Part shown: in pieces, positions 291 to 63,576 of the stretch
Layout: each line of letters begins with the position of its first letter
Numbering within the stretch: position 1 is the first letter of the stretch
Origin: Carcharhinus longimanus
Lineage: Eukaryota
Direction of reading: 5' to 3'
Assembly: GCA_030264375.1 (NCBI GenBank)
Contig: JASCQW010000119.1
Location: forward strand, 9,334,685 to 9,398,684
Length of the DNA stretch: 64,000 nt
The notes under the pieces: model-generated
The model's input: only the letters and a program-made list of their open reading frames with translations
The model's database searches: none
What the model was told of the DNA's origin: nothing
Program-made: the position numbers and the translations under genes

Positions 291-399
291 TGTTCGCTGG
301 TGAATGACAACTCTCTTTTTTTGCATTGTGGACACCTTTCAACCCCTTGCACTTTAACTTTTGTCCCGTGTCGTAAGAACAGATCAGAACACCCTGGGG

Positions 400-4130: not shown

Positions 4131-4149
4131 AGGTCCTCATGGTGGGGGA

Positions 4150-5745: not shown

Positions 5746-5989
5746 CTGCCTCCCGGTTCACCTGTCCAGTTCTCTGGCAGTAACTCCCGTGTTGCACCGA
5801 CTCCCAAGCTACTATTCCATTCCTTCATCTTGGACGGCGTCCTGCTAGGGGGAAGAATATCACTCTTGTGCACCCTCCAGCAACCTGGTCAGGTCTACAT
5901 CCTGAAGAATAGGATTTGTCTTCCTGGTGACAATTTATTTCCACACTGCAGGCCTGTCTTATCAGGGCAGATCATCTGGAAGAACGTTG

Positions 5990-6607
5990 ATCGAGCTTAG
6001 CGTCCGTTGGAGCATTCTAGCGGGTTAAATGATTTTGCTTTGTTGTTATTAAAGAAAAGCCAAGCAGTAATTTGCAGGTGCGCTTATGGATTTAGTATGG
6101 AGGTGGGGGGTGGGTATTTTTCGTCTGTGGCAATTGGTGGCAAGGGAGTCAGGGGGCATGTCCATAAGCCATCAGAGCCTGGGCGGGGAGGGGTGGCGGG
6201 GTACGGAAGGGGGCTGTGAAGATGGGGTCGTCTGCCAGAGGGTTTAGGGGGCGCCATTGGGGTTGGCTTGTATGGGAGTTGCGTGGGGCAGGAATGTTCA
6301 GATCTCCGGTGTCTGTGGAGGAGAGCGTGGAATATTTTTGGCCCTCAGTTGTTTATTTTTGCAGCTAAGCTGCATTTTTGTGCTGCCTCGATGCATGCGC
6401 GGTTCTATGCTCCTGCGATATGATCTGCACGCTCTCCGGCTCATTAGGCTATACCCCCAGTCTCTCCAGTCTAGACACAGATTAGCTTTTATTTTCTCAA
6501 AGTAAGTTCATAAAGTTGGGCATTAGAACTCGCCGGAGAAACGGACCAACTCTATTTTTTTTTCAAGCTAACTGGAGACTGGGGCAAAATCTCGTAAATT
6601 TCCGCCA
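5990..6607. mobile_element. Probable non-autonomous DNA-transposon (Harbinger/MITE-like) end
   Basis: G-rich tract ending in TIR-like gtaaatttccgcc at an abrupt switch to AT-rich DNA. Family recognised from memory only. Confidence 0.35.
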
Positions 6608-6753
6608 GATATTTTATTGCATTTTGTGTGTACCATTGCAAGCATGAGTGGTGCACAGTTACAGACATGTTAAACTCTATCTGAAACTAAACAGATTTAG
6701 ACATAAAAAAAAAGTTTGCAAAAATGTGTGTTTCAGTCACGTTCCATACTCAC

Positions 6754-6789
6754 CTAATTGTTGCACCAATGTTTTGCATTCCCATAGTT
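6754..6789 (-). CDS. Microexon 19 (36 nt): [12 protein letters not shown]
   Basis: gtctgcactgcag|AACTATGGGAATGCAAAACATTGGTGCAACAATTAG|gtgagt. The donor shows the gene continues downstream. Confidence 0.92.
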   Translation of the reverse strand, partial: NYGNAKHWCNN

Positions 6790-9700
6790 CTGCAGTGCAG
6801 ACATATTTGTTTATTTTATAATTGAAGAGTCTTTGTTTATCGAAGTTGACAATTGATTCATCCATAAATGTTACCTAATATTTGGCCATCACAAAGTAGC
6901 GTCAGACAATGTGCTCCAATTTTGCGCTTGTTTTGCACATATCGAATTATATTTATCCAAAATAGCCCAAGACAATCCAGTGGCCAAACTACTTCGTTGT
7001 GTATGAGGCATAAACTTCCTCTCAGAGAATATCAATAGGTCCTTCATAAGATTGCAACGTTGTTGCTATCGGTAGGATTGCAGTTTATATTTAGGTTACC
7101 TTTTTCTTTGTCTGCCAACTTGTCCTCTATTAGGAGGCAAACAATATATAAATAATGCAATGAAATACAAGTTCCAAAGTACACATTTATTTCACTGTGC
7201 CGCGATTTGAGTTGTCAAGTGTCTTCTCAAGTGTTCTCTTTCGAGGAAACTTTGCCGATTATTAGAACAGCATGACGTTATATATTCACATTTTACTGAA
7301 ATATGTAAGTTAGTAACTTATTTGTTTGTTCACAAAAAAACAAGCAGCCAAACATTAGAGATGCTCGCAGTCACATCAAACGGTTTCTATTTCTGAGATA
7401 AAATGTGTCAACAGAACACATGTCTGCAATTGAGAAAGTTATAGACATTGGCATTTCAAATGACTCACCACATTCCATCAATGATTTTTCACATTGGGCA
7501 ATTTCTGGATCAAATTTAATATAACGTTTATTTTTTTTTCTAAGTTCAATAGATACTGTTCAATGATTCACGGATACGAAAGTTATCAAATGCTATAAAA
7601 TCTATTCGAAAAAAAATAAAACAAAGAAACACGAACATGGACGGCTGATGCAGCTGCCTAGAACTTGAATAAAAGAGACAACTGAGCAGAATAAATAACT
7701 CACTTATCAAAGGCAAAGCTACATTTTATGGTACAGTGAGTAGTGTCACAAAATCAAATTAAATTCCAGCAGGTTTATTTGGCAGCACGAGCTTTTGGAA
7801 CACATCTTTTTCATCAGATGTATGCAGGATTTGTTTCAACACCTGAGGAAAAAAAAATGTGCACTCAAATGATGAAGGAACCGTGCTCCAAATGCTCGTG
7901 CTACCAAATCAACGTGTTGGATTTTAATCTGGTGATGTGAGATTGCTTACTGTGCCTCCACCAGTCCAACGCCGGCCGCTTCATTTCCTGGCATTTCATG
8001 GTGGCCGCACAGCTGCATATTATCTAGGGTAATGAGCAATTTGCAATGCAAGGCGACCTAGTCACGGACACTTACATCTCAAGAATATGAAAAATAAGTT
8101 ATATAAAGCAAAAGCACTGGGCTGAAAGTCAAAATGGAGTGCCAATATGACAGCAATATTTTTCAATCAGCTCAATTCTAAGAATGGTGGGCGAAGGGCA
8201 CTTTGTCAATCGTTAGCAGAAACTTCCGACTGCAACAACCATAAACAGATTATTTTCATATTAAGCTGAACCTATATGCTATGTACTATGTTTTCAGCGT
8301 TCTGAGAGAGGTCAGACTGTATGCTTGAAATCATCAATTCCCTGCGCATCAAGGCTAATGGTAACGCAGTCCAGCACAGTCTGTTAAAGAGGGAATTATT
8401 GATTTAAGCTGCAAAAGCAAAAACATACGTATTTGCACTGTTGAATGTCTTCAAATTTCTTTCGGAGCTGAGCGCATTCACAATCCGTTCATGTACCCAA
8501 AATGCTGGAAAAGGCAGGGGATGAAATTGTTGGGGCATTGAGAGAAATATTTGAATCCTTACTGGCTGTAGGGGAGGTCCCAGATGACAGGGGAATAGTC
8601 AGTGTGGTTCCTTTGTATCAAAAGGGTAGCAAACTTTATCCAAGTTACCCAGTGTCCAGTTAACTCGAAAAAAAAGGCCAGTGAGCCTTTGGTCAGTGGT
8701 AAGGAAATTATTGGAGATGATTCTTCGAGACAGGTTTTACTCATGCATGGAAATAAGTGGAAATACATGTTAGATAGAGGTGAGGGTGATGTCCTGCCTC
8801 AATACTTTCTTCATTTTTTTGAGGAACTGTCGAAGATATTTGATGAGGGTAAGGCAGCGGACGTGGGCCCCATGGGCTTAGGTAAGGTGTTTAGAAGGTT
8901 CCTCATGGCAGACGGATACAGAAGGTGAAGTCGTGGGCTTATTAGTAAACTTGAAGCCGACACAAAGGTTGTTGGAATTGTGAATGGTACTGAGGGCCGT
9001 CGGAGGACAGTGCCGGATATAAATCAGTGGAGAATGGAGCGCAGAGATGGAGATGGAGTTTTATCCGGGAAAATGCGAGTGAATGTATTTTGAATTCCTA
9101 ATTGAGATGTTGAATACACAGTAAATGACTGAACCCTGAAGAGCATTGATAAACATAGGGATCTCAGTGTGCAGGTCACAAGTCGCTAAAAGTGACAATA
9201 ATGGTTGGGAAGGTCGTACAGAAAGCATCCGACATTCAGGCCTTCATTGGCCGGGATATTGAATTCAAAAAATGGCGATTCATGTTTCAAGTTTATAGAA
9301 CCACGGGCCGCGCTTGGAATGCAGTGTTCAATTCTAGTCGTCACGCTACCAGAATAATTTTAAGGGTTGGAAAAGAGAACAAGAGTTTGTTTAGTCGGGA
9401 AGGATTTACTATGAGAAGAGAGGGTGAACTTGTTTATTTCTTATTGGAACGGTGGAAGTTGAGGGCGGCCCAATAGAAGTCTACAAGGCCGTGAGGGATG
9501 GGGGCAGAGTCGACATTCAGAAGAATGGAAGAGCAGTTTACGGGAGCGGGGGGCGGTGGGGAGTGGGGCAGAAGTTTGTGTTACAAGGGGTAAGGCGATA
9601 AGATATTCACTAAGTCGTATTTTTTTTACATAGACGGTGAGGGTGTCTGAAACTTGAGGCTGTTGGAGAACGTGGGAACAGGTACCATAGTAACTTATAA

Positions 9701-12700
9701 GGGGCATCTTGAGAACTACATGGATAGGATGGCAGTAGAGAGATAATGTCAGCGGAAGGGCAGGGGTTTTAGCTCAGTCAGGCAACATGGTCGGCACAGG
9801 CTTGGATGGCCGAAGGGCTAGTTCCCGTGTCTTAATTTTCTTCTTTATTACTTGCATTGCTACTGTGGTACGCTAGAATTCAACGTACGATTTTTCTGAT
9901 TTTTTTTGGTACGGTTGTTTGGCATTGCGTTAGCTATTTGGTGTTTGCCGAATATTGTGCCGTTGTAAGGGTGACACTGAAGGCCTTCTGTGATGCTTCC
10001 TTGATTTGATTTTTTGTTGTCACAAGCAATAGTACACCGTGAAATGTTTTTTTTTGCATGCTGTACAGACAAAGCATATCGTTAATAAAGAAGGAAAGCG
10101 GAGACTATGGAGTGGCTACACTCACGGCTAGGTTGTGGAGAAATATCAAATTAATCCTCGAAAGGTCCAATTAAAAGTCTGATGGGAGGAGGGAAGAAAC
10201 TGTTCTTGAGTTGGTTGGTCCGTGACCTGAGACTTTTGCATCATTTTTTCCTCCTGACTGAAAAAGGTGGAAGAGCATATGTCGACGGATTATTAATTGT
10301 GCTGGCTGTTTTGTTTTCGAAGCAGTGGAAATTGTATACAGAATCAATGGGTGAGAGGTTGTTTTGCGTAATGGAATGGGTTTCATAGATTTTACACATT
10401 TTCTTTAAGCATTTTGAAGTTATACGTCGTCCGCATGAGCATTTGTTTGTTGCTTTAATTTTCCGTTGTGCCTTACAAAATCACGGATTATCGCGTGAAT
10501 TCATGCATTTTTCACGAACGCTGACATTAACCAGCTCAGAATTTCGAAATTCATAATATTGAATGGTTTACTTGTCATACCTTCGGTTTTGGCATCCAAC
10601 CTTGATTCTGATTGAAAGTAAAAAAAAACACATTTCCAAAGAATGTGAATTGAACGCAAGGCACGGGGAAGTTGGGGGGAGGGTGGGGTGGTTTAATTCC
10701 CTTATAAATGCATAAATTTGCCGAAGCATTGCATTTTTTTTTCATGGAAGAATACGTTTTGACAACGGCACGACAACACATTGACTGCACTGCTGAAATA
10801 CCATTTTTTGTTTCGGAACCGAAGCTTCTGAGATCCTTGTGATGGATCTCCAGATTATCGACACATAAGTTTGTAACATTTTTGTCTACAAAATTGCTAA
10901 CATACACTTAATAAGCTTAGTGGTATGTCAAAATGTTCCCGTAGCTTTGTAAAGGTAGTTGGAACATCAGCACGTTCGCCTGCGAAAGATGATCTTTTTA
11001 AGTAGAAGTGTTAGTTGATACTCGCCTAATTCGTTCATCAACTGTTTGCAGATGGCGATTTCTGTGTCCAGGCAAACCAATGGTATGATTAATTTCAACA
11101 GTCATTCGTTTAATTAGTTCATTAGCAGCATAATGTTTCAATGTGCTGAATTATTTACAACACATATAACTGTTAAAGTGTTTGTCATGCATATATTTAG
11201 GACTTGAATGGCACTGAACCAAAATGAGAGAATCTGTGGTTCAGTTAGCCGAAAACATAAAAAAAAATAGATTTTTGTTATAGACCATATGAAATAGAAA
11301 AGGGAAATCCTGAAATAGCAAACCGTCGACGAGGCTGAATTAGGTAAATAAACATTTTGCACATTGGGTGCAGTGTTTAGGTGGGCCGCATAAAGGCCTT
11401 TTCTTGAGGGCTACGGTGAGATCAAATGTCTCGAAGCCGTGAATCATACATTCGACAGATGCTATGTCTATACCATAAAACAATCAGTAACAAATTATAT
11501 TTCTGTTAAACGATTTGAGACAATGGGAAACACCAAACCCATGAATGTCCATGGACTAGGTAAGCAGTTGAGGATGGACTTCTCAAGGGCAATTAGGGAT
11601 TGGTAGGAGAACCTGACCCAAGAAATTATCATCGTCTGATCAGACAAATAATATGAAGCAGCAAGGCTGACATTCAGAATTGACTGAGCATATGGCATCA
11701 AAGTGTGGAAGCAAATCAAAACCAGTAATCGATGGCAATGGACATTTTGTCAGCAGCGCAGTCGCAGAGTAAGAACACCTTGCGAATTAATTATTTTTGC
11801 AACGACTCCACTGTGGGAAAAATCTGTTTCTATTATATCAGGTTCTTGGAGAAGTCCGCTTTGGAATCATCCCAATAAACGAACATCGTGTATTCACTGT
11901 CCACATGAGAACGGAGGGGAACTCGAATAACAATGCCGTGGTTGTTTTCTAGTTGGTTTCAGTAACGCATATAAAGTGTGTTAGATAATACAACAGTATA
12001 TAGGTAGATTGGAAAATTGGGCAGAGTAATGGCANNNNNNNNNNNNNNNNNNNNNNNNNNNNNNNNNNNNNNNNNNNNNNNNNNNNNNNNNNNNNNNNNN
12101 NNNNNNNNNNNNNNNNNNNNNNNNNNNNNNNNNNGATGAAATTAAATAGGAACAAACGCAAGATGATGCAATTTGGTAGATCCAGTTGAGGGTTGGAGCT
12201 AAATAAAAAATAACTATCAGAGCAATCAGGAGCATAGACACACAGGGGACCGGGAATACAGGTCTACAGATCCTTAAATGTGGCAGCACAGGTGGAAACA
12301 TCGTGAAAAACACATATGGCATGTTGATATTTATCGATGGGGCATGGAGTATAAAAGTTGGCAAATTATGTTATAGTTGTATCAAATATTGGTTCGGCCA
12401 CATTTGGAATACTGCATTCATTTCTGGTCACGATACTGGGATTGGTCTCCCTGGAAAGACGGGGACTTCGGGGCAACCTGATTGAAGTTTATAAAGTCGT
12501 GAGCTGTATAGTTAGGACAAGGAGATGGAAGATTTTTGTTTGTTTTCCCGGAGCTTAAATGACAAGCACAGGGAAGCATAATTTCAAGCTAAAGACTGAA
12601 TGGCTCAGTTGACATCTGCAGTTTTTTTTAACACAGAGGATGATGGCGCCTCAGAATGCACTGCCATGTGACGTGGTTGAGGCAGTTAAGGTAGTCACAT

Positions 12701-15700
12701 TTATGGCTTACCTTGATAGGCATATGAATAAACTGGGAAAAGAGGGATGCACGTTGCTTGTTTAGATAGTTAAACGTGGTCGGTACAAGTTTCGAGGGTC
12801 GAAGGGTCTGTTCCTGTGCTGTACTGTTTGCTGTTATGTGTTAGTTACGCTTTTCATTCCTTAAAGATGGGGACTCTGTGCAGAAGAGGTCCCAAATTTA
12901 TTGTGCTGGAATAAAGATCTATTGCTCCATGAGTTAATTTGATATAGTTTAATTGTTTTATCGGAAATTTTTGCCTACAGACCTTAACGTTTCCACGTAA
13001 ATAATTGCAAATCTAAATAGTACCGCGAGGTCAATCGATCAGTGCTCAAGACTATTTTTTGTTTTCACAGTTGAATCCTAGTTATATTATGATAGGCGCA
13101 AATTGCTTACATTCGCTGACAGACATCGAATTTACCCTTCATTTCAGGATCGGAACTCTAACACTCAAATTGCAATTAATCAGTTTTAAATGTTTTGAAG
13201 GGGCAACATGGAGAGACGCATCAAATGCTTGCTTCAGTTATAGATAAAGGAGACATTTATGCCTTTGTGCAAGTGGTGGCTGAAAGTGGTTTGCAAAATC
13301 ATTGATGAAACATATTGAGTAAGAATGGGTTAGCAGTTCAATTTTACCTAATTCATACCATTGCATATTTTACTTTGTTACCTTTTTCGCGTTCTTCCAG
13401 TTTTTCTTCTGTTGGCAAAGAAACATTTTCAAACAATCTCCACTTTCTCGTGAATTTCACTTTAATTTTACACTTAGAGTAAAAGCTATTATTTTCGTAC
13501 GTAAAGTTAATCTCAATAATTTCATTTTGATTCGGAGACAAAGAGAAAAAAATCGACTTGTTCGCCTCACTAATATCAGACGTCATAAAAATCATAGTAT
13601 GAATTTTGGTATTTCGAATCAGAGTTTATTCCGAACATTCACTATTGGTTACTGCACCTTAAGTGCAATATCTGCTGTGCTGCGACAATGTCCAGANNNN
13701 NNNNNNTCCAGAATTTATATTGGCATCGCACAGCAACACACTGAGTTGTGCACACACAATACTTGTATGATTGAACGTGGTAAAAGATGGATGAAACACT
13801 TGTGGTCCAAGAAGCCAATGACAACTAATTCAATGTACGTATTGGCACGAACGCTGGTCGGTAAAACACAACTGCCTTACAAGGAACTTCACACCGACCT
13901 TCACAACTGACAAGGATCCTGGCACTATTGTTCAGGGACAAAGTTGCGAAACCTTCACCGCATCCTAAACTCGTTCCAAAACGTAGCCAAGACCATCTGT
14001 TTCTTGTCAATTGGATAGAAGCAGGTCTTCGGATTCAATGTACAATTGCCGTACTGATGGATATTAATGTCTCTGTGATTTTTCAGTCACATTTGAAAGC
14101 CAATGTTGAATAAAATTCCTGAGAGTGTAAATGTTGTTTTGTTAAAACTAGAAATATATTTGTTCCGTGCTACTGTGGCCACATAATAACGGATCGCTTG
14201 TTCGAAAGCTTTCCACATATGTTTACGTTTGATCCTAAGAGACAGTGTGCACCTTTGAGTACGGATCCCTCATTTTTTTTCTGAAGAATAATGATAGTCA
14301 CATTTCTGAGTATTGGACAGTTGTAGTATTCCGCATATATTGACTTCCTTCCTACTCCACACGACCTTAATTGAACAATATGGATATGACCGGCTTGACT
14401 TTTTCACCAGATTAAAAGAAAACAAATCTCACCAGTGTTCAGAAGTTCATACTTTGTAAAGTAATTTAACAATGTAATGCATTCCACTAATGTTGTTAAT
14501 TTGTATAACATCTGGGAAACGCATAATAGAGTAATGTTCATTGCACGTGCCTCCAGCGAATGTTGACGGGAAAGTATGGATGTGGTGTACTCTGCTGGAA
14601 AAAAAAATGACGCTGATAAGAATTCTACTCCAAATGCCAGCCATGTTTTGTGGTTGTCCGGTTTTGCATTGTCTAGGTGAATTACAAATATTTCAGTTTG
14701 GCCACGCGGTCGGGGAATGTGTGCAATTATGCATTGCAATTGTTGGCGCTCCTGTCTCTACCAGTCATTGGAACTAGGCAAATTAGTGCATTTTTGAAGA
14801 GGCATTTGTAGAAGATCTTTAGGTTCCCGTGGTCATACACCGTTTGCTTTGGTGGCTGCCTTGTTTCGTCTAGGTCAACCTAAGGAAATGTCGATTCTTG
14901 ATCCGAAAGTGGGCAGAACGCGAAAAAGAAAATGTTTTCATGCGCATTTTTTCCTCACTAGAAATAATTTGCACCATAACTGAACTCAAAGTCTGGGAAA
15001 TACATGGACACTCCGACTGTCCGCCTTACTTTCGCCATCTTTCATTACCATGACCATTTTCTGGAAACAACACTATTCCATATATGCGGTCCTGGTGCCT
15101 GTAAAACCTATTATATTAAAGAATTCAGTGCGTTTTTTTTTACATTCAGGTTTACCCAAGGCTAGTTTGTTGTCTCAAACTTGGCAAATAACTCCATATG
15201 TTCATGAGGTTGTCTGGGCAGCGTCAGAAGACAAGCATTGCCTTTGCAAATACTGGTGCGGATTCTGCTGCCGGGTTGCCTGATTAGTTTTAAACGTTCA
15301 CATATTTTTACCGCTTGTTTCACTTAGAGTTTGATATAACTTGCCTATTTTGAAGAACACTTCGGTTTGGTATTTGCCCAATGAATTGCAGGGACATATT
15401 GACATTGTTTCCACAAATGAATAGCAGACAGAGTCCAAAACGGCACGTTGTTGAGGACCTAAAATTAACGAATATCTACTGCATCTTGATTAATTGCTCC
15501 ATTATCAGTGATGATCGTGCAATGGATACAGCTTTTAAAACGGCATTTTAAATCATGATGTATTTCTCTGATTAACTCAGTCGGAACTGGAGATGGTTTT
15601 GTAACGCTCTGCACGATTATACACGAGAGGTTCGATGGATTGCCTCTGAAATGCAATTTACCCCAATCTCGTGCAAAAACTGGCTCCCCGCCCAACAAGC

Positions 15701-41731: not shown

Positions 41732-41764
<33 letters not shown>

Positions 41765-56700: not shown

Positions 56701-59700
56701 TGCTAAAACTTTGTCTGTTATTCCCAATTATTAACTGGAAGAAAAACGCTGGCGAAAATAAGGTTATTGAAACAAAGCCAAATAATATACACTACCATTT
56801 AAAATAAGAGAGAAAAAAAATGTCATGCATGCAGGTTCTTCACTACTGTATTTACGTCTGAATTTAAAGAGTGGTTGTTGAGTTGTGTTTTAGTCGACCA
56901 ATTTGCTGAAATGACAGACGAGGAACATGAGGTGTTGTCATTTACCCGTTTCTTTTTCTTTCAACTTCTCCTCTTTTGAAAGGAAAATGATATTCCATTT
57001 AAAATATTCTTAAATATGTTCATTTACTGTCATATATGACAATTCAAATTCCTCCAATCCCCAATATTTTATTGGCAATAGGTTGAAGCATAAGTCAGAA
57101 ATCTAAAGCATACTTTGTATAAATTCTGCCATTAGGACATTGTCAGTTTTTTTTTAACAATACTTCGAAAATCATGCAATGGATAGAATTCAGCAATGTT
57201 TTGCAAAATTCTCTTTAGCTAATGGATTATATGTATTGGGAAGAAATAGGTAAGTGGATTTAAGTTGACTATCAGGTATACTTGGATTTTCACAAGAATT
57301 GGTAAGATATTTTGTATATTGTATAATTGGATAAGAGAATTTTTCGTGTGGAATGTCATGATACTGTGGATACATGTTTATTTCTCCAGCAGGATGAATA
57401 AAGTCCGGCAACAATTCTCGTTCTGTTCGTATTATAAAGTTTTAATGAGAATAGTGCCACATAGCTCCCTGTCGAGGCCTGAATAACTTAAATATATTTT
57501 AATAGTTTGGATGAAGAGAACCAATGTATATCAGTTACTTTTGCCGTTTTCCTTAGGAAATACATAACCTAATTGATGAAGGGGATGGGGGGATCCGTAA
57601 AATAGATAACAGAAGGAAACTGAGTAAGCGTACATTCCAAAGATTAGGTGAAACGTCAGGAAATGTGAATATATCAAGGACGGCATGAAAGACAACAGAG
57701 AAATTTTCTTTTAATTAAGGGAGACTTGTAGAACTCTGTATTGTGAAGATGTACGGTACAGAATCACAAAACGTTGATATATACATGGCATTACTAATTG
57801 TATTTTAAAATTTCATTGAAGGAATGTTTGACTTACCGTCTAGGCCGCCATTAATAGTCGTTTCATACTCGCTTGAACATGTGATAATGAGCTCTTACTA
57901 TGATCAGCGGCATGACATATCATAGATTATCTGGGAGGATTTTTTTTTCCAGTGAATGCGGCTGAATGTTTTGTTTTCAAATTCGATTGTGAATTCCTTG
58001 GAGGGAGCAGTCATTTTGATACTACTGCCTTCTGCCGACTGCCCATATGATTTGAGGTTACAATAATCAGGCATTTGACATGTGCTACCGTACGATTACT
58101 GGCGAACTAACATAATGCTACTTGTAGAGGTTGCACACTATTGCCACCAATGGCTATTAATTGAGGGACTGGAAGTTTGCAGACTGGTTAGAAAACAAGC
58201 GTTTTTGATTTTTATTTGATGTTGCTAAGCCTGTCAAATGTTGCTGGTGTTCGACACTTCCATGAAAGAGCTGAGTATCACATCATGTGGATATTTAAGG
58301 CGGTTTTCTGACTTCTACAATCACGGGATTCAGGCAAGTTTTACCAATTTCTCTACCCAGTGTAAATATATTGCTTGGCCAGTTTGGATTTGTTTAATGC
58401 TAATCCAATGTTATTAATGCTGCGTGATTTACTTTTTGTAGCACCAGTAATTATCAATTGTGCTGATGTTCTCACTTATTATAAAAACGCAACACAAACG
58501 TCAGCTGCCGCGTACAATCCCAGGTCTGATTATCGTCCAGATTTTGATGACTTCAAGTGGCACTGAGATTATGTTGTGCCTTTGGACAAACATACGCTCT
58601 GATGGTCGAATTTAAGAAGTTTAGCGCTAGATAGGATGCTGTTCTGACTATATTGTATTGTTGCATGAACTACCTATTTCAGAGTGTCACCAATTTTTGC
58701 ACAAGCCTTCAAATGTTGATATGAAAACTCTTCAGGGTCCGTGGAACTGTAATTGTTTCTGTTCATTCCTGGTGCCATGTGGTGCACACAACTTTGTCCC
58801 ACAACCAGCTTTGCTTGCAGCATTTTTTGTTTCCTAATTGATAGGGCTTTTCAAAGCGTTATTTAAAATACAGCTCATGTCGTTTCGTCCTTTGAGGCAC
58901 ATATAGGCCAAACCTGGCAAGGGTGACTCATTTCTTTGTCTAAAGTGAAAGTGTGAGCCAGAGGGATTAAAACAAATGTTAACCTTTGACACAAATGTCA
59001 TTTGGGTTCCAAATGTATATATTTTTTAAATAACGCATCCTCTATATAATGTATCTCTTCAGCAATATCCAGATTTTTAACTCAATGACAATTCTTTTTT
59101 TTTCATCAATGAGATAAATTCATGTTGTTTTTGCTTGCAAGAAAATTGAAATGTGAAAATCAGTACGTTGCTCTTCAGGTGGTTATTAAGTGTGAAATCA
59201 AGGCTTCTTTTTTGTCTTATTAGCAAGTTTAAAGGCAGTGAATATGTGCATTTTTTTTTCAAGTTTCCGGGGTGGATAGCAAAAGGGAAGTTCCATTTTG
59301 GCAGGAGTTTATATGTAAACATAACTGCATAAATGATATTCTCTCTGAATGTCATTGAATCATATAAACCCCGCAGTGCAAAAATAGGCTATTCGGCTCT
59401 TTGACTCTGCACCAACCACAATTCCACCCAGCCCCTTTCCCCATATCTCCACATATTTACCCACTAATCCCTCTAATGTACGCAACCTGGAACACTAANN
59501 NNNNNNNNNNNNNNNNNNNNNNNNNNNNNNNNNNNNNNNNNNNNNNNNNNNNNNNNNNNNNNNNNNNNNNNNNNNNNNNNNNNNNNNNNNNNNNNNNNTT
59601 CCCCATATCTCCACATATTTACCCACTAATCCCTCTAATGTACTCAACCTGGAACACTAAGGGACAACCTAGTATGGCCAATTAACCAAACCCGCACATC

Positions 59701-62700
59701 ATTGGACTGTGGGAGGAACCTGGAGCACGGGTTAATATGCAATATGTGCTTGCTCCTCTGAGAAAGTAGTTAGTATGGGAAACTATCCTTCTCAATAGAA
59801 CTGAAGGCTGGGTCACTGAAATAACAGTTAGGCAGCTATTGATAACGAATGGTCAATGGAAACAGACAGGAACGTACAGTTGACACAAAATTTGTATCAG
59901 CCACAATTTCATTAAGGGACAGAGCTGAGGTTTCTCGGAAATTAAAGCTGAAACGGACGGAAACAATGGAGTGGTTTTATTGCAGCAAAGTATTACAACC
60001 ACATATGCTCAATAGAACACTTTGAAAAGCTTTCGAGACATCTATTTGGTTGAGATCTGGGACGTGATGGCTTGCATTTCTAAAATCTCTATGCAGACTT
60101 CGACATATCACATTACTTCTATTACACACAAAAAAAGATAAATTTCTTCCGAGGGAGGACATCTGTTTTCTCACCAAAATCGTTCACCGAAGCTTGGCAT
60201 GCGGATAAATCTGCTCAAGCAAAAAGCAAAATCACAGTTGTCGAACTTCAGTTGACATTATTTTATTGTGTTTGCTTATTAGAATTAGCCTTAAAAAGTT
60301 CGTATGTATATCGTGGTATGCAGCCCTCGTGCTGTCGAACAATTACTGAACATCTTTATTTGTTCTCAGGAGATGGTGTCAAACATCATTATTGACTGTT
60401 GTCTGTCAACTGCTTTTATAAATAGCCACAACACATGTTTAATGAAAATTGGGTTGCAGTCATTCGACACAGCGACAACGAACGATCTACAATATATTTC
60501 CGCCTCATAAGTGTGCACTAATTGATAAGGTATTCCCAGTTATGCAGTGTAATTGGTATCAGTTAAACGTGCTTCTGGAGGGACATTTAGGATGCACCAC
60601 AGCGTTTTTTCAGTGGGCATGAATTGAATTCCAATAGGTCTGATCTTCTCCTTCCCTACAAATCGCCCATGCCAGCAAGGAATCATCGAACAAAGTTTGC
60701 AGACTGCTAGACTTCTAATCCATTAACATATCCTTATTTAAACATTGCTGTCATCAGCAATTTCTGTTCTACTTGTCGAAGCGCTTACAATTGTGTTTGA
60801 TTAATTCAATTCGGACGAAAAAAGGAACATTTCACACTAACTACATTGTGTTCAGCGAACGATCAACCCTTCACCTCACTGAAGCCGGAATTTAATTTTA
60901 ATTGTGACAAATGCGTTACATTCTTGGAGGACACATGGATTTTATAGTCTTGCTACCAATGACTGCAGACCACATATTACTCAGACAAGGTTTACTGTAG
61001 TACGAGAGTTCTAAATGCTTTGTCATTCATTAACTTATTTCGTCTCATTACGAAACATGTAATGTTCACCAGTTGTCGAGCTGCACCATTTAAGTGCTGA
61101 TCAAATGAACAACATTTCCTTACAACGTAGCCAGCGATGTCAGGAAAATGACCACCTTATGAAATCAGTGGTCCTACTAAAATGACATGTTCGGTTTGAA
61201 TCAAAGTGAAATCAATTATCCAGGTGGCATAATTACCCTAATACGTGAAACTTTCTCCAACCGTTCAACCAGGTAATTCATGGGCATCAGTTCGTAACAG
61301 TGCTACCTGCTGTCCAAGTGGATGTTTTAGTATGATTCTCTCTCCCTCTGCATTACCATCATTTGAAACATGATGCTGAAAACACATTTCATAGATCAGT
61401 CGTCAAACTTACGCGTGATAATTAGCGTCAGGTGTATTGTCAGATATTTTCCTTTACCATGTCATGTTATTTGAGCATTTCTGCAGTGTTATCATGAACG
61501 TATTTTTACCATGGATATTACTGTCATCAGTGTTGCCGACTGCATCTTCTTCGAAGTTATTTCAAATATTTTAATTTCAGCTTAATTCCTGAAATCAACA
61601 AAGAGAAAAGCACAAACCTTGTTTTAATTCATCTAATGCTTCAGCTGGTGGATTTAATTGAAAGGAGCGTGAGTTTTTAACAAGAACGCAATGTTTAACT
61701 GCATGATCGTCGTTAGTCATTAGATGAAAATGATGCACTCAGGAGGCACTATTCCAGTAAGTAAGTGAACGTTGTGTGAACTTATTTTTGCGAAAATCGC
61801 AAATGTATGCATCAGCAAACACCGAGAATGCATGTTGAACGTTACAATAACTAATCTTAAGTTTCCAAATTTTTCTTACAAAATGAACGTCCAAAATGAA
61901 GGATGCGCTTACATTGTCACATTCTGTTATTAAAGATTAGACGTTGCCAAGTTTGTTTTTATTACATATTATTCCAAGAAAAAAAAACTGAATTGTGAAT
62001 CTAAAATGCCGAGTACAAAGACGCTGGCACATGGCTATTCAGAACACATCGCCTGAATCTACAGAGTGAATACGATTAAGAGTGCGACAGACGTGATACA
62101 GAGTAAAGTACATCATCGCTTAAATAATTGGGAAAGTTCAATGACATGTTGCTTAACTCTGTTTCACTTTGCAGACGATGGTACGTGACCAAACATTGAT
62201 TGCGTTTGTGTTCAATCCCGAATGTTTTCTTTACACTTATTATTGCTTGCTCTTATGGATTGCAACATAAAAAAATGCTGTATATGAGGCAAGTGTACAG
62301 AGGCACTTAATAAATAAACATCAATGTCTCTTGAATTGTAAGCTTTAGAATTCCAGGAACTAGATGTACAATCTTTACTGACGCTAATTAGCACCGGTGC
62401 ATTCGGGAAAAAAAACAAGAAACGGATTGATGGACTGCAGTTAGATTGGGCAAAACATGAAGTACTTTCAAGTGAGGATGAAAAAAAAATGCTCCCAGAA
62501 TTTCAGGTCCGGGCACNNNNNNNNNNNNNNNNNNNNNNNNNNNNNNNNNNNNNNNNNNNNNNNNNNNNNNNNNNNNNNNNNNNNNNNNNNNNNNNNNNNN
62601 NNNNNNNNNNNNNNNNCACTTTATCTTTATATAATTTCTACTCGATTCCATGTACAATGTAGAATCAGGGCATAAGATAATATTTCGGATGGTTCTCGGT

Positions 62701-63576
62701 CTGTGTGGAATGCATTGCATGCAAACTAAAATTTGCCGACCATTCCACTGCTGCTTAATCGGTTCGGTCAGAGTTTCAAGTGTGAGCCAATAAATGAAAT
62801 GTGCGATATAATGTCACAACTTTAAAGATTTTTTTTGTTAATACATATCACAGCATGAACGCATTTCCAGACTTCAATTTAATCTCAAATCCGATTGCAA
62901 TATTTCATTTAGGTGTTGCCTGCACCGTGGATTTTCTTTGTTCAATCATTGTAAGTGTGTATTCTTCGTCGGTTTACATTCTCTCAGAGCTTTCCACGAA
63001 GCATTTTTGCCATCCTGCCTCCGCTCTTCCCCTTTTTTGGCAAATCTTGTCTCCCTTTCTCTCTCCATATCTCTATGACACTCAATGAGTTCAGCTAAGA
63101 TTCTCACGTAAGCTTTGCTCATTCCTGCCACAAAGGGACATAGGCACTCAACACAAAACAAAAACGGGACATACATAAGCTCCTTGGTTCCTCAAGACTG
63201 TTCTTCAATTCTATATTGCGCTGGCTTATCCAAAATCGCAACACCATACGTCCGAGATTTCCCCTTGCTCCCTAACATCTTTACAGTTGAGAAATCTATC
63301 TATTTCATGTTTTAAAATATTCAGGGTTGTTTCCTTCACAGCCTTCTGTGATATTTCATGACGCCGACTCCCCACCGCCCGAGTGACGAGCTTCCTCATC
63401 ATCCAATGACGTAATGGCCTGCCTCACATTCTGACAATAGCCACAGGCAAATGACACATCGTGCTAATAAGCAGTCCCAGCAATGATCTTTATGATTGAA
63501 CAATATAAAATATGAGGAAAACAATGCACAATCCTCTTACCACATTTTTTATTCGCGATGTTGCAATTCTCCAACT
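6754..63576 (-). CDS. Partial multi-exon gene: 19 alternating 36/27-nt phase-1 microexons encoding a 21-aa-repeat, Cys-containing coiled-coil rod (about 201 aa seen; N- and C-termini not found)
   Basis: Ten 36-nt and nine 27-nt segments flanked by AG and GT/GC, in unbroken alternation. The joined frame has no stops and no Pro, and all ten 36-nt exons have Leu/Ile at position 2 and Cys at position 5. Confidence 0.92.
7100..7126 (-). CDS. Microexon 18 (27 nt): EDKLADKEK
   Basis: tttgcctcctaatag|AGGACAAGTTGGCAGACAAAGAAAAAG|gtaacc. Confidence 0.9.
7469..7504 (-). CDS. Microexon 17 (36 nt): [12 protein letters not shown]
   Basis: aatttgatccag|AAATTGCCCAATGTGAAAAATCATTGATGGAATGTG|gtgagt. Confidence 0.92.
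7731..7990. mobile_element. Penelope-like terminal hairpin (inverted repeat) relic
   Basis: Arms at about 7731-7796 and 7890-7955 are imperfect reverse complements. Same family as 27165-27358. Confidence 0.65.
8500..9850 (+). mobile_element. Decayed CR1 LINE
   Basis: [17 protein letters not shown] (CR1 FFEEVTxxxDEGxAVDV), IGRDIEFK, and tail ggccgaagggctagttcccgtg. Confidence 0.85.
10130..10400 (-). mobile_element. Rex1/Babar-type LINE 3' fragment
   Basis: gggaagaaactgttcttgagt resembles the Rex1-like 3' fragment at about 46190-46240. Confidence 0.5.
10581..10607 (-). CDS. Microexon 16 (27 nt): ESRLDAKTE
   Basis: ttttactttcaatcag|AATCAAGGTTGGATGCCAAAACCGAAG|gtatga. Confidence 0.9.
11026..11061 (-). 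CDS. Microexon 15 (36 nt): [12 protein letters not shown], with non-canonical GC donor
   Basis: tgcctggacacag|AAATCGCCATCTGCAAACAGTTGATGAACGAATTAG|gcgagt. Confidence 0.85.
11975..12845 (+). mobile_element. Decayed CR1 LINE (contains a gap)
   Basis: [20 protein letters not shown] and tail gggtcgaagggtctgttcctgtgctgta. Confidence 0.88.
13382..13408 (-). CDS. Microexon 14 (27 nt): EEKLEEREK
   Basis: ttctttgccaacag|AAGAAAAACTGGAAGAACGCGAAAAAG|gtaaca. Confidence 0.92.
16780..16930 (-). mobile_element. HE1/V-SINE fragment
   Basis: ctgtgggaggaaactgcagtacc...aacgcaggcagacacg, the reverse of the V-domain seen in intact copies. Confidence 0.55.
17407..17442 (-). CDS. Microexon 13 (36 nt): [12 protein letters not shown]
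   Basis: gtctgccatctag|ATTTAACCACATGTAAAGCTATTTTAAAAGAAACGG|gtacgt. Confidence 0.9.
17735..17758. repeat. Poly-C tract next to a short gap
   Basis: Uninterrupted C run. Confidence 0.95.
17870..20310 (+). mobile_element. Second LINE family (CR1/L2-group RT), split by a younger CR1 insertion
   Basis: [16 protein letters not shown]...PLTK at about 18050-18120 resumes after 18880 with acaatgtggaaaa...caggacaaatccaaccc. Further RT-like pieces follow: [22 protein letters not shown]. Confidence 0.8.
18127..18880 (+). mobile_element. Relatively young 5'-truncated CR1 (HER1-like) LINE
   Basis: [43 protein letters not shown]; [16 protein letters not shown]; 3' tail repeats ctatgttgtatgttgtatgttcta. 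Confidence 0.95.
20770..22800 (-). mobile_element. Highly decayed RTE-clade LINE
   Basis: [10 protein letters not shown]...[18 protein letters not shown]...KC matches the RTE RT motif KILARILLNRL...ESQCGFR...TxDMIF...QEKC. Confidence 0.7.
22950..24880 (+). mobile_element. Rex1/Babar-clade LINE, decayed
   Basis: Recognisable WFKxIIxVPK, LND..PVxxTSTIMKxFE, [17 protein letters not shown], NYSSAxNTIIP, [28 protein letters not shown], and a tail ending aataacaatccaatcgaatc. Confidence 0.88.
24925..25425 (+). mobile_element. Young CR1 LINE (RT core plus 3' end, gap inside)
   Basis: [42 protein letters not shown] and tail gggccgaagggcctgtttccc. Confidence 0.95.
26287..26388 (-). mobile_element. 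HE1/V-SINE 5' (tRNA-derived) head; rest lies in the gap
   Basis: Reverse strand has an A-box-like ggtggcacagtggttagca and B-box ggttcgattccc, followed by ctgtgtggagtttgcac. Confidence 0.88.
27165..27358. mobile_element. Penelope-like terminal hairpin
   Basis: Near-perfect inverted arms of about 50 bp at 27199-27248 and 27308-27356. Confidence 0.7.
27352..27632 (+). mobile_element. HE1/V-SINE
   Basis: B-box ggttcaattcc, V-domain ctgtgtggagtttgcacattctc...gggtttcctccgggtgctccggtttcctcccaca, and CR1-like tail gatgggctgaatggc...tctgcact. Confidence 0.9.
27640..27775 (-). mobile_element. CR1 3' tail fragment
   Basis: ggaggccatttggcccctcaagactgctctgc...ctatatctaatttcttc. Confidence 0.6.
27780..28110 (-). 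mobile_element. tRNA-derived SINE of a second family (possibly SacSINE1/DeuSINE-like)
   Basis: Reverse B-box (gggattcaaacccagg on +) and core ggaaggaaatctgccatccttacccggtctggcc. Family name from memory. Confidence 0.6.
28378..28705 (-). mobile_element. Near full-length HE1/V-SINE
   Basis: tagaaaccctacagtgcagaaggaggcc ... ggaaaccggagcacccggaggaaacc ... ggaatcgaacccggg ... gtgctaaccactatgccaccgtgcc. Confidence 0.92.
29335..29975 (+). mobile_element. 5'-truncated CR1 LINE
   Basis: [26 protein letters not shown]; [11 protein letters not shown]...[16 protein letters not shown]; tail tgtaatgttctaagttcta. Confidence 0.95.
30646..30672 (-). CDS. Microexon 12 (27 nt): EEKLKDKEN
   Basis: atatgtcttcag|AAGAAAAACTGAAAGACAAAGAAAATG|gtaata. 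Confidence 0.9.
31047..31082 (-). CDS. Microexon 11 (36 nt): [12 protein letters not shown]
   Basis: cctatgtgatccag|ATTTAGCCTGTTGCCAAAACTTGTCAAAAGATTTAG|gtgagt. Confidence 0.92.
31968..32480 (+). mobile_element. 5'-truncated CR1 LINE
   Basis: [17 protein letters not shown]...; tail gctctatgctctat. Confidence 0.92.
33439..33465 (-). CDS. Microexon 10 (27 nt): EEEIGEIKD
   Basis: ccaacttcaacag|AGGAAGAAATTGGTGAAATTAAAGACG|gtatgt. Confidence 0.88.
34230..34410. mobile_element. Penelope-like hairpin relic (second subfamily)
   Basis: aaagtgctggagagtctc ... gagattttccagaattt inverted arms around ttcgagtctggatagcccttcctcagaatctggacgaag. Confidence 0.5.
35477..35512 (-). CDS. Microexon 9 (36 nt): [12 protein letters not shown]
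   Basis: ggttctcttaaag|CGTTGGCAGATTGCAAGTCTTCACTGAAGAAGTTAG|gtaaca. Confidence 0.9.
38518..38810 (-). mobile_element. HE1/V-SINE, decayed
   Basis: gtgcagaaggaggtcattcgg ... ggaaacccacacagacacagggagaatgtgcaggctccacacagac. Confidence 0.85.
39790..40800 (-). mobile_element. Decayed copy of the second LINE family, with a CR1 tail inserted at about 40140
   Basis: Reverse similarity to the 3' end at 20000-20310 (aatatatttccaagtcaagg, ggagctggcagctggtggtgttc). Confidence 0.55.
40141..40214 (-). mobile_element. Young CR1 3' terminus with (aagaacat)n tail, running into a gap
   Basis: ataagaacataagaacataagaaataggagcaggagtaggcca; the same sequence recurs at about 49525-49583. Confidence 0.85.
41080..41600 (+). 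mobile_element. Decayed fragment of the second LINE family
   Basis: cagccagaagtgcccagtggatgat... and aacaggacaaatcctacccaaccaatta resemble 17900-18980. Confidence 0.65.
41716..41773. repeat. Compound (GT)n(GC)n(GT)n microsatellite
   Basis: tgtgtgtg...tgtgcgcgcgcgcgcgcgtgtgtg... Confidence 0.97.
42017..42043 (-). CDS. Microexon 8 (27 nt): DGKLREKDE
   Basis: ttattttcaacag|ACGGAAAGTTAAGGGAAAAAGACGAAG|gtactt. Confidence 0.88.
42621..42656 (-). CDS. Microexon 7 (36 nt): [12 protein letters not shown]
   Basis: ttcacccggtgcag|AATTGAACATGTGCAAGGAATTGGTTGCCGATTTAG|gtgagt. Confidence 0.92.
43797..43845. repeat. Imperfect (CA)n microsatellite
   Basis: acacacacacgcacacacacac... Confidence 0.95.
44400..45030. 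mobile_element. Two decayed CR1 fragments (minus about 44400-44830, plus 3' end about 44850-45030)
   Basis: cagaactgaaggccatactc is the reverse of an EYxxQFW-like motif; tail gaagggcggagtggcctgattctgcttc. Confidence 0.55.
45705..46540 (-). mobile_element. Rex1/Babar LINE 3' end, interrupted by a CR1
   Basis: [27 protein letters not shown], and the tail ttgatttattattgtcac on the far side of the CR1. Confidence 0.8.
45880..46152 (+). mobile_element. Young CR1 LINE fragment spanning a gap
   Basis: [30 protein letters not shown]; tail gggccgaagggcctgttctgcgctgtaatgttctatg. Confidence 0.93.
47309..47335 (-). CDS. Microexon 6 (27 nt): IETERETRE
   Basis: attgccttcaacag|TTGAGACAGAACGCGAAACAAGAGAAG|gtaggc. 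Confidence 0.82.
49525..49583 (-). mobile_element. CR1 3' terminus running into a gap
   Basis: aacataagaacataagaaataggagcaggagtaggccatctagcccttggag. Confidence 0.85.
50380..52200 (+). mobile_element. Long decayed CR1 LINE (gap and unrelated insert at about 51515-51870)
   Basis: [39 protein letters not shown], and a 3' UTR ending ggagggccgaaggacatgtccc. Confidence 0.85.
55050..55930 (+). mobile_element. Decayed copy of the second LINE family
   Basis: [12 protein letters not shown]...[22 protein letters not shown] parallels 19430-19570 ([10 protein letters not shown]...ANKWQVTF). Confidence 0.75.
56497..56532 (-). CDS. Microexon 5 (36 nt): [12 protein letters not shown]
   Basis: ttcttcacttgcag|AGTTGGAAGACTGCAACGCTGCGAACAGAAAATTAA|gtgaga. 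Clear paralog of exon 1. Confidence 0.9.
   Translation of the reverse strand, partial: SWKTATLRTEN
56946..56972 (-). CDS. Microexon 4 (27 nt): EEKLKEKET
   Basis: tttcctttcaaaag|AGGAGAAGTTGAAAGAAAAAGAAACGG|gtaaat. Confidence 0.9.
57220..57800 (+). mobile_element. Very old CR1 fragment
   Basis: YLDF-like tacttggattttc and WI-like aattggataagag motifs. Confidence 0.4.
59355..59730 (-). mobile_element. HE1/V-SINE spanning a gap
   Basis: catatttacccactaatccctctaat ... cacatcattggactgtgggaggaacctggagcac. Confidence 0.85.
60175..60210 (-). CDS. Microexon 3 (36 nt): [12 protein letters not shown]
   Basis: tttgcttgagcag|ATTTATCCGCATGCCAAGCTTCGGTGAACGATTTTG|gtgaga. Confidence 0.9.
61618..61644 (-). 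CDS. Microexon 2 (27 nt): AEALDELKQ
   Basis: aaatccaccag|CTGAAGCATTAGATGAATTAAAACAAG|gtttgt. Weaker splice sites, but size and position fit the array. Confidence 0.78.
63541..63576 (-). CDS. Microexon 1 (36 nt): (E)[11 protein letters not shown]
   Basis: gattcattacag|AGTTGGAGAATTGCAACATCGCGAATAAAAAATGTG|gtaaga. First residue assumes an upstream exon ending in G. Confidence 0.9.

What the first reader, a model, noticed from the sequence alone, without database searches (positions are those of the whole stretch)
6754..63576. Hidden gene made of strictly alternating 36-nt and 27-nt microexons spread over 57 kb
Seen: 19 minus-strand segments with proper splice sites alternate 36/27 without exception. 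All are phase 1-1 and join into 603 nt without a stop. Each pair encodes 21 aa, consensus [ED]LxxCxxxxxxL + EEKLxEKEx. Several exons (3, 5, 8, 17) turned up exactly where the alternation predicted a missing one. Coding DNA is only about 1% of the span and the exons are far below ORF-finder size. Inference: a real gene that automated annotation could miss or fragment. I do not recognise this 12+9-codon architecture from any named gene.
Basis: partly seen in the sequence, partly recalled or inferred. Interest (0 to 1): 0.96.

Follow-up and report, generated by a model that had tools for sequence, protein, structure and literature searches.

The report
Coiled-coil rod gene built from microexons
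Nineteen tiny exons of 36 and 27 bases, strictly alternating over 57 kb, look like real coding exons of a cartilaginous-fish-type gene and would spell a long, cysteine-studded alpha-helical rod, but which gene it is and whether it is expressed could not be checked here.

Summary
All 19 minus-strand segments are at the stated places. They have 19 AG acceptors, 18 GT donors and 1 GC donor, and alternate 36/27 without exception. Only phase 1-1 is free of stops: 0, against 20 and 11 in the other two phases. With leave-one-out matrices, each exon outscores every other AG..GY window on both strands. Exons are about 50% alike, introns are at random level, and third codon positions are least conserved. 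All 12 gaps inside the span lie in introns, so the frame does not depend on them.

Each 36+27 pair gives 21 residues, which is three heptads. Five of the six core positions are hydrophobic, Cys is invariant at one d position, and there is no proline in 201 residues.

My reading: this is the internal part of one real gene. It encodes a coiled-coil rod of about 30 nm, built by repeated duplication of an exon pair. It is probably an extracellular, disulfide-linked stalk.

Not shown:
- Expression. No RNA run exists.
- Conservation in other species.
- The gene's ends and its name.

The closest architectures are tropoelastin's replicated exon pairs in phase 1:1 and the CD23 neck. I rate it a new variant of a known kind, of moderate to high interest.

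The parts
63541..63576 (-). exon 1, 36 nt, phase 1-1
   Evidence: leave-one-out score 30.2 against a best other window of 2.8
61618..61644 (-). exon 2, 27 nt
   Evidence: leave-one-out score 18.8 against 10.2; exon-only score 10.5 is within background
60175..60210 (-). exon 3, 36 nt
   Evidence: leave-one-out score 37.1
56946..56972 (-). exon 4, 27 nt
   Evidence: leave-one-out score 32.1
56497..56532 (-). exon 5, 36 nt; the only exon that ends in A
   Evidence: leave-one-out score 29.5
47309..47335 (-). exon 6, 27 nt; the weakest member
   Evidence: leave-one-out score 14.0 against 9.8; exon-only score 0.7; it lies between introns that hold 4 gaps
42621..42656 (-). exon 7, 36 nt
   Evidence: leave-one-out score 33.7
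42017..42043 (-). exon 8, 27 nt
   Evidence: leave-one-out score 31.7
35477..35512 (-). exon 9, 36 nt
   Evidence: leave-one-out score 22.5
33439..33465 (-). exon 10, 27 nt
   Evidence: leave-one-out score 23.5
31047..31082 (-). exon 11, 36 nt
   Evidence: leave-one-out score 32.2
30646..30672 (-). exon 12, 27 nt
   Evidence: leave-one-out score 25.0
17407..17442 (-). exon 13, 36 nt
   Evidence: leave-one-out score 17.8 against 5.2; exon-only score 8.0
13382..13408 (-). exon 14, 27 nt
   Evidence: leave-one-out score 32.6
11026..11061 (-). exon 15, 36 nt, with a GC donor in an otherwise consensus site
   Evidence: leave-one-out score 30.2
10581..10607 (-). exon 16, 27 nt
   Evidence: leave-one-out score 19.4 against 6.7
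7469..7504 (-). exon 17, 36 nt
   Evidence: leave-one-out score 23.7
7100..7126 (-). exon 18, 27 nt
   Evidence: leave-one-out score 27.1
6754..6789 (-). exon 19, 36 nt; the last repeat exon in the window
   Evidence: leave-one-out score 33.9; no further copy downstream

Best explanation
The 19 segments are real, spliced coding exons. They form the internal repeat region of one protein-coding gene on the minus strand, whose first and last exons lie outside the window.

The region arose by repeated tandem duplication of a two-exon cassette of 36 nt plus 27 nt, possibly later in four-exon blocks. The copies then diverged for a long time and the introns grew by transposon insertion.

Each cassette encodes 21 residues, exactly three heptads. 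The array would therefore spell an unbroken alpha-helical coiled coil of at least 201 residues. That is about 30 nm, using a recalled rise of about 0.15 nm per residue.

An invariant Cys sits at one core d position of every unit. Glu/Lys pairs occupy g and e positions. Both fit a parallel, in-register strand arrangement in which the cysteines of partner chains face each other.

I infer a disulfide-laddered stalk or rod of a secreted or membrane-anchored protein. This is inference, not shown.

Every exon is symmetric in phase, so any exon can be skipped without a frameshift. Only skipping a 36+27 pair keeps the heptad register, so rod length could be set in steps of 21 residues. This too is inference.
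For: Shown by calls:
- All 19 exons have AG acceptors and GT or GC donors and alternate strictly. One particular order of ten and nine items is 1 of 92,378.
- Only phase 1-1 is open.
- Each exon beats all other candidate windows on both strands in leave-one-out scoring. No hit on the plus strand reaches 12 bits.
- Exon identity is 0.504 and 0.534, against 0.27-0.32 in flanking introns. Identity by codon position for the 36-nt exons is 0.517, 0.643 and 0.354.
- Conserved Leu and Cys use synonymous codons: TTG, TTA and CTA; TGC and TGT.
- The most alike exons share only 25 of 36 and 21 of 27 bases. No intron is duplicated. So the copies are old, yet they keep exact length, frame and splice sites.
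- Heptad table: L/I 10 of 10 at position a2, C 10 of 10 at d5, hydrophobic 7 of 10 at a9, 9 of 10 at d12, and 8 of 9 at a16.
- Position g1 is E/D in 8 of 10 and e6 is K in 5 of 10. Position g15 is K in 5 of 9 and e20 is E in 4 of 9.
- There are 0 Pro and 2 Gly in 201 residues.
- DNA contigs of run X1 agree with the assembly over exons 15-19, with 0-1 differences.

From papers:
- A parallel dimeric extracellular coiled coil held by Cys-Cys bonds, with destabilising core residues, is documented for BST-2/tetherin (PMC3235769, passages).
- Genes with all exons in phase 1:1, built from replicated alternating exon pairs that allow cassette-like splicing, are documented for tropoelastin (PMC12554196, passages).
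Against: - There is no expression evidence. The only run that holds the stretch is DNA-like and shows no joints.
- No comparison with other species was possible.
- No signal peptide, membrane anchor or terminal domain was found. The ten longest minus-strand open stretches in 1-4807 gave no Pfam family at its cut-off.
- The sixth core position (d19) is Lys in 5 of 9 units and hydrophobic in only 2 of 9.
- Exon 6 is weak: exon-only score 0.7, and 14.0 against 9.8 with flanks.
- Six exons are not distinguishable from background by exon sequence alone.
- Disulfide formation, strand number and cellular location are inferred from the residue pattern only.
- The coiled coil was not tested with a predictor or a fold, because that needs the joined model.
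Confidence: 0.78

Rival explanations
1. The exons are real and encode the same coiled coil, but the protein is intracellular, for example a cytoskeletal, centrosomal or Golgi-tether protein. The cysteines then serve only as small hydrophobic core residues and form no disulfides.
For: The E/K/L-rich, proline-free heptad pattern is also typical of cytoplasmic coiled coils. No signal peptide, membrane anchor or extracellular domain was found in the window.
Against: Cys is invariant in 10 of 10 units, while the neighbouring core positions vary. This is unusual for a purely hydrophobic role. Uniform phase 1-1 is, from recalled general knowledge, more typical of extracellular modules. Tropoelastin is a documented case.
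Confidence: 0.25
2. The array is a decaying relic: pseudo-exons of a dead gene that are no longer spliced into an mRNA.
For: There is no RNA evidence. Exon 6 is divergent. One donor is GC and one exon ends in A.
Against: The copies have diverged to about 50% identity. Even so, all 19 keep exact length, the open phase, an AG acceptor and a usable donor, and 18 of 19 keep an AG-free zone. Third codon positions are freer than the first two. Neutral decay would have produced stops and indels.
Confidence: 0.05
3. The 19 exons belong to two or more tandem genes of one family rather than to a single transcript.
For: The long introns of 9.2 and 13.2 kb contain gaps and could hide terminal exons. There is a hint of a four-exon super-repeat.
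Against: No other exon type, domain or long open stretch was found between the exons. Alternation and strand are unbroken across all 18 adjacencies.
Confidence: 0.07
4. The pattern is a chance set of AG..GT segments picked out by eye.
For: There are many AG-N27/36-GT windows without stops: 130 and 154 on the minus strand. Exon sequence alone does not separate 6 of the exons from background.
Against: The motif counts are 9 and 6 on minus and 0 and 0 on plus, with shuffle means of 0.785 and 0.085. None of more than 700 other windows of each type reaches any exon's leave-one-out score. There is a single open phase.
Confidence: 0.01

Closest known systems
Tropoelastin (ELN) gene architecture
   Same: All exon borders are in phase 1:1. 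Two exon types alternate, and the region was generated by replication of exon pairs followed by divergence. Exons are small and the coding fraction is low, about 6% there against 1.06% here. Cassette-like skipping is possible without a frameshift (PMC12554196, passages).
   Different: Elastin exons encode Gly/Val/Pro-rich hydrophobic domains and Lys-Ala cross-linking domains. Here the exons encode a proline-free heptad pattern with Cys. Exon lengths here are fixed at 36 and 27 nt. This is not a family member.
CD23 (FCER2) and related type II C-type lectin necks
   Same: The stalk is an alpha-helical coiled coil with a heptad pattern (PMC6791321, passages). I recall, but did not confirm in any call, that the CD23 neck is built of 21-residue repeats, each encoded by one 63-bp exon. 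That is the same unit length as here.
   Different: Here each 21-residue unit is split into two exons of 12 and 9 codons. There are at least 9.5 units rather than 3-4. Cys is invariant in the core. No lectin-domain exon was seen within 6.7 kb downstream. CD23 is described as a trimer. The Asn at an a position and Leu at d here suggest a dimer instead, by a recalled rule.
BST-2/tetherin ectodomain
   Same: It is a parallel dimeric extracellular coiled coil. It is stabilised by in-register Cys-Cys disulfides and contains destabilising core residues (PMC3235769, passages). This is the mechanism I propose for the Cys at d5 and the Lys at d19.
   Different: Tetherin has 3 cysteines in a coiled coil of about 70 residues. 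It has no 21-residue periodicity and no microexon array. No membrane anchors were found here.
Schistosome micro-exon genes (MEGs)
   Same: [quoted passage not shown]
   Different: MEGs are a flatworm-specific family whose exons are not periodic heptad units. There is no sequence relation, and the host here is a vertebrate-type genome.
Non-fibrillar collagen genes with 27/36/45/54-nt exons (recalled, not checked in a call)
   Same: They have long runs of very small exons whose lengths are multiples of 9.
   Different: There is no Gly-X-Y pattern: only 2 Gly in 201 residues.

Membership tests
Spliced protein-coding exons of a functional gene | One reading phase is open through all exons | tested here: met
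   Phase 1-1 has 0 stops; phases 0 and 2 have 20 and 11
Spliced protein-coding exons of a functional gene | Splice-site signals are above background | tested here: met
   19 of 19 have AG and 18 GT plus 1 GC. C at -3 in 15 of 19. The AG-free zone is 27 nt or more in 18 of 19. G[TC]RAG donors number 8 of 19, against 95 of 3480 GT sites
Spliced protein-coding exons of a functional gene | Coding-type conservation: exons more alike than introns, third codon position freest | tested here: met
   Exon identity 0.50-0.53 against 0.27-0.32 in introns; third-position identity 0.354 and 0.423. This is among paralogous exons only
Spliced protein-coding exons of a functional gene | Junction-spanning RNA reads | not testable with these tools
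   No RNA run holds the stretch; the one DNA-like run shows no joints
Spliced protein-coding exons of a functional gene | Conservation in related species | not testable with these tools
   No vertebrate genome or transcriptome collection was available, and the joined model was not to be searched
Alpha-helical coiled coil | Heptad a/d positions are hydrophobic | tested here: met
   a/d positions are LIVMFC in 46 of 58 cells; other positions in 11 of 143 (summed). Position d19 is the exception, at 2 of 9
Alpha-helical coiled coil | No helix breakers | tested here: met
   0 Pro and 2 Gly in 201 residues
Alpha-helical coiled coil | Predicted or measured helical, oligomeric structure | not tested
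CD23-like type II C-type lectin receptor | C-type lectin domain exons 3' of the neck | tested here: inconclusive
   No lectin-like family appeared in the ten longest minus-strand open stretches of 1-4807. The next intron may exceed the 6.7 kb available
CD23-like type II C-type lectin receptor | One exon per 21-residue repeat (recalled feature) | tested here: not met
   There are two exons per unit
Tropoelastin | All exons in phase 1:1, with alternating replicated exon pairs | tested here: met
   feature taken from PMC12554196
Tropoelastin | Hydrophobic Gly/Val/Pro-rich domains and Lys cross-linking domains | tested here: not met
   Composition is E 41, L 29, K 29, P 0, G 2, V 3
Schistosome micro-exon gene family | Short symmetric exons separated by long introns | tested here: met
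   feature taken from the abstract of PMC10526429
Schistosome micro-exon gene family | Flatworm gene family with a signal peptide in a flanking normal exon | not testable with these tools
   The flanking exons lie outside the window. The interspersed repeats look like shark or ray elements to me, but this is recalled, not tested
Collagen | Gly at every third residue | tested here: not met
   2 Gly in 201 residues

The most novel reading that the evidence does not exclude
This is a vertebrate 'micro-exon gene' with no named family. It has at least 19 consecutive symmetric exons of 27 or 36 nt, each pair encoding exactly three heptads. Together they build a disulfide-laddered coiled-coil rod. 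The rod's length would be tuned in steps of 21 residues (about 3 nm) by skipping exon pairs. The gene is missed or fragmented by standard annotation.
Probability: 0.25. Interest if true: 0.8.

Novelty: new variant of a known kind. Interest (0 to 1): 0.62.

Why it matters
If the array is transcribed as read, it would be an extreme case of exon definition in a vertebrate-type genome. Nineteen consecutive exons at or just above the microexon size are separated by introns of 0.3 to 13 kb, and only 1% of the span is coding.

It would also be a clean natural example of a repetitive protein in which the exon-pair boundary coincides with the structural period of three heptads. The geometry of the protein and the arithmetic of splicing would then be coupled.

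Practically, such genes are the kind that ab initio and ORF-based annotation lose. Microexons are reported as hard to detect and often misannotated (start of abstracts only: 10.1101/2020.02.12.945683 and PMC8831610). A profile of the two exon types could recover the gene and its relatives in other genomes.

If the gene turns out to be a known, annotated coiled-coil receptor or matrix protein, the finding reduces to a neat description of its exon structure.

Tried and rejected
Gene identity by homology. Single exons give 8-12 residues, below the length limits of the family, atlas, representative and homologue searches. The joined model was left out, so no coiled-coil predictor, fold or search was run on the joined peptide. 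As an exon-by-exon substitute I aligned the ten 36-nt exons (A1) and the nine 27-nt exons (A2) as separate rows. I searched the A1 profile against PDB sequences and got 0 matches at E up to 10. An 11-column profile has little power. The aligner also turned an initial TTG into M in 4 rows, an artefact of table 11. A2 was not searched.

Further exons of the gene.
- Nucleotide matrices found no extra copy on either strand. The best other windows scored 16.2 with flanks and 15.0 to 16.3 without.
- The ten longest of the 51 minus-strand open stretches of 40 aa or more in 1-6753 were scanned against Pfam. Nothing reached a curated cut-off.

Other checks.
- Rfam gave 0 matches.
- Tandem repeats were only microsatellites and a 10-mer.
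- Intron duplication was rejected. The direct repeats are interspersed-element pieces.

Expression. One run was listed. It is DNA-like, with share 0.91 and depth about 10. Laid on 5401-11400, it gave no joints and 0-1 differences. It may be the source sample, so it is not independent support.

Literature. I ran ten searches. Searches looked for a described gene with alternating 36/27-bp exons, 21-residue exon repeats or runs of microexons. They found none. This is a blank in an open-access library, not proof that nothing is in print. Searches did not confirm my recalled statement that each CD23 repeat is one exon. Supplementary files were not opened. Those of PMC12554196 may list exon sizes that bear on the elastin comparison.

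The collagen, elastin and MEG readings were rejected as memberships on composition or taxon.

The four-exon super-repeat is only a hint. Identity at lag 2 is 0.556 and 0.571, against 0.488 and 0.519 at lag 1, from 7-9 pairs.

Full report
WHAT IS THERE

Ten are 36 nt and nine are 27 nt, and they alternate without exception.
- All 19 follow an AG.
- 18 are followed by GT and one by GC. That one is exon 15 (11026-11061), in an otherwise consensus donor.
- 18 of 19 end in G; exon 5 ends in A.
- Read in phase 1-1, the split codons give Glu or Asp at 15 of 18 junctions.
- The exons sum to 603 nt in a span of 56,823 nt, or 1.06%.

GAPS, TESTED FIRST AS ASKED

Twelve of the 13 gaps lie inside the span. 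All are in introns, and the nearest is 281 nt from an exon. Every exon is a multiple of three and symmetric in phase, so the reading frame does not depend on any gap length.

Ten of the 18 exon-to-exon adjacencies lie in gap-free sequence and eight cross gaps. All 18 alternate, and all exons are on one strand. That argues against misordered or flipped contigs.

Gaps cluster in the two longest introns, 9.2 kb with three gaps and 13.2 kb with three gaps. Further exon pairs may be hidden there. I did not try to fill any gap.

IS IT MORE THAN CHANCE?

- AG-N36-GT without a stop, with L/I at residue 2 and C at residue 5: 9 on the minus strand and 0 on the plus strand. 200 dinucleotide-preserving shuffles gave a mean of 0.785 and a maximum of 4.
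- A matching criterion for the 27-nt type: 6 on minus and 0 on plus. Shuffles gave a mean of 0.085 and a maximum of 2.

Other tests:
- Only phase 1-1 is open. It has 0 stops, against 20 in phase 0 and 11 in phase 2.
- With leave-one-out matrices that include 14 nt of acceptor and 6 nt of donor, every exon outscores every other AG..GY window. There are 356 minus and 399 plus windows for 36 nt, and 342 and 376 for 27 nt, and none reaches any exon.
- The margin is smallest for exon 6, at 14.0 against 9.8.

One result goes the other way. On exon sequence alone, six exons have leave-one-out scores inside the background range. They are exons 13, 17, 2, 6, 10 and 16. These depend on their splice flanks, length and position in the series.

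One strict alternation of ten and nine items is one order out of 92,378.

SIGNS OF SELECTION

- Paralogous exons are 0.504 (36-nt type) and 0.534 (27-nt type) identical on average. Introns 21-60 nt upstream and 7-60 nt downstream are 0.27-0.32 identical.
- Identity by codon position is 0.517, 0.643 and 0.354 for the 36-nt type, and 0.602, 0.577 and 0.423 for the 27-nt type.
- Conserved Leu and Cys are written with synonymous codons.
- The most alike exons share only 25 of 36 and 21 of 27 bases.
- No intron is duplicated. The direct repeats found are pieces of interspersed elements.

So the copies are old, yet all keep length, frame and splice sites.

The splice signals look real:
- C at -3 in 15 of 19, and never G.
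- Pyrimidine fraction 0.658 against a background of 0.498 (sd 0.141).
- G[TC]RAG donors in 8 of 19, against 95 of 3480 GT sites.
- No AG within 27 nt upstream of the acceptor in 18 of 19.

WHAT IT ENCODES

I tabulated residues exon by exon, without building a joined string. Each 36+27 pair gives 21 residues, which is three heptads.

Core positions:
- a2 is L/I in 10 of 10.
- d5 is Cys in 10 of 10.
- a9 is hydrophobic in 7 of 10, with Asn twice.
- d12 is hydrophobic in 9 of 10.
- a16 is hydrophobic in 8 of 9.
- d19 is the exception: Lys in 5 of 9 and hydrophobic in 2 of 9.

Summed, a/d positions are LIVMFC in 46 of 58 cells and all other positions in 11 of 143. There is no proline and there are two glycines in 201 residues. 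Glu (41), Leu (29) and Lys (29) dominate.

Acidic g1 with basic e6, and basic g15 with acidic e20, are the pairings expected for a parallel in-register coiled coil. That rule is established knowledge, recalled.

At a recalled rise of about 0.15 nm per residue, the 201 residues would span about 30 nm.

SURROUNDINGS

- No other gene is evident. ORFs of 110 aa or more are reading-frame noise or element remnants.
- One piece at 25007-25156(+) matches reverse transcriptase RVT_1 at E 3.9e-08.
- Rfam gave nothing.
- Downstream of exon 19 (1-6753) there is no further repeat exon.
- No Pfam family reached its cut-off in the ten longest of the 51 minus-strand open stretches.
- Only 424 nt lie upstream of exon 1.

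The gene's ends are therefore outside the window.

EXPRESSION

The one run that holds the stretch is DNA-like. Its contigs cover 5401-11400 at depth about 10 with 0-1 differences and no joints. It may be the source sample. There is no RNA evidence for or against.

MECHANISM

Shown:
- A two-exon unit repeated at least 9.5 times.
- Uniform phase 1-1.
- Heptad periodicity that coincides with the exon-pair period.
- An invariant core Cys.

Inferred:
- Tandem duplication of an exon pair created a rod. Even lags are slightly more alike than odd lags, 0.556 and 0.571 against 0.488 and 0.519. This hints at later duplication in four-exon blocks.
- Partner chains pair in parallel and the d5 cysteines form a disulfide every 21 residues.
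- The Lys at d19 keeps the coil locally weak. This is the same combination described for the tetherin ectodomain (PMC3235769, passages).
- Skipping a pair would preserve the heptad register. Skipping a single exon, of 12 or 9 residues, would not.
- The purine-rich 27-nt exons may act as their own splicing enhancers.

COMPARISON WITH KNOWN SYSTEMS

The gene architecture works like tropoelastin. There, all borders are in phase 1:1, alternating exon pairs have been replicated and have then diverged, about 6% of the gene is coding, and cassette-like splicing occurs (PMC12554196, passages). The composition here excludes membership.

The protein resembles the heptad necks of type II lectin receptors such as CD23 (PMC6791321, passages). 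I recall that CD23 repeats are 21 residues, each in one exon, but two searches did not confirm this. Here the unit is split into two exons, and no lectin exon was seen.

Schistosome micro-exon genes share the design of tiny symmetric exons with long introns (PMC10526429, start of abstract only). They are unrelated.

Collagen is excluded by the lack of Gly.

Five literature searches for this exact architecture found nothing. That is a blank in an open-access library, not proof of novelty.

WHAT WAS LEFT OUT

Single exons of 8-12 residues are below the length limits of the homology tools. The only exon-by-exon search possible was a profile of the ten 36-nt exons against PDB sequences, and it found nothing. 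The notes of earlier scans never opened. So the gene's name, its presence in annotations and its conservation in other species remain unchecked.

VERDICT

The segments are very probably real coding exons of the repeat region of a coiled-coil protein (0.78). The extracellular disulfide-linked stalk is my preferred but unproven reading, at about half of that. Novelty: a new variant of a known kind, namely exon-pair replication in uniform phase 1-1, applied here to a three-heptad unit made only of microexons. Interest 0.62.

Noticed in passing
window 59437-59498 and 59599-59660: Two 62-nt copies, 98% identical, lie directly on either side of the 100-N gap at 59499-59598 (family D6). This looks like overlapping contig ends that were not merged, so the gap may be spurious.
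   Followed up: no
window 40141-40200 and 49524-49583; also 26287-26387 and 28596-28696: Copies of interspersed repeats abut the N gaps at 40215, 49584 and 26286 (families D4 and D5). The assembly seems to break at repeats.
   Followed up: no
window 25007-25156 (+): A reverse-transcriptase fragment (Pfam RVT_1, E 3.9e-08) is cut off by the gap at 25159. Related element tails recur at 18239-18470, 29352-29576, 31984-32056 and 45881-45946 (families D1-D3). To me they look like shark or ray LINE tails; this is recalled, not tested.
   Followed up: partly
window 7601-7800, 8601-8800, 9601-10400: Contig word depth in run X1 is very high in these places, up to about 29,000, against about 10 elsewhere. 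These are high-copy repeats inside the intron between exons 16 and 17.
   Followed up: no
acceptors of the 27-nt exons at 47336-47343, 42044-42051 and 33466-33473 (minus strand): Three of the nine 27-nt exons are preceded by the same 8-mer, TTCAACAG, and three more by near copies. Identity at -20..-3 is 0.42, against 0.28 further upstream. This may be a retained splicing signal of the ancestral cassette.
   Followed up: partly
donors of the 36-nt versus 27-nt exons: The two exon types have different donor styles. Seven of the ten 36-nt exons have G[TC]GAG. The nine 27-nt exons mostly have GTAA or other weaker forms. This fits duplication of the whole pair together with its splice sites.
   Followed up: no
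window 35477-35503 (minus strand): An internal CAG inside exon 9 would give an alternative 27-nt exon in the same phase. It may be coincidence.
   Followed up: no
window 1-4000: G+C is 0.49 here, against 0.35-0.43 in the rest of the window. GC skew is strongly positive at 4001-12000, at 0.14-0.21. No Pfam family reached its cut-off in the minus-strand open stretches here.
   Followed up: partly
window 41715-41773 and 43797-43845: There are (TG)n and (AC)n microsatellites in the introns flanking exons 7-8.
   Followed up: no
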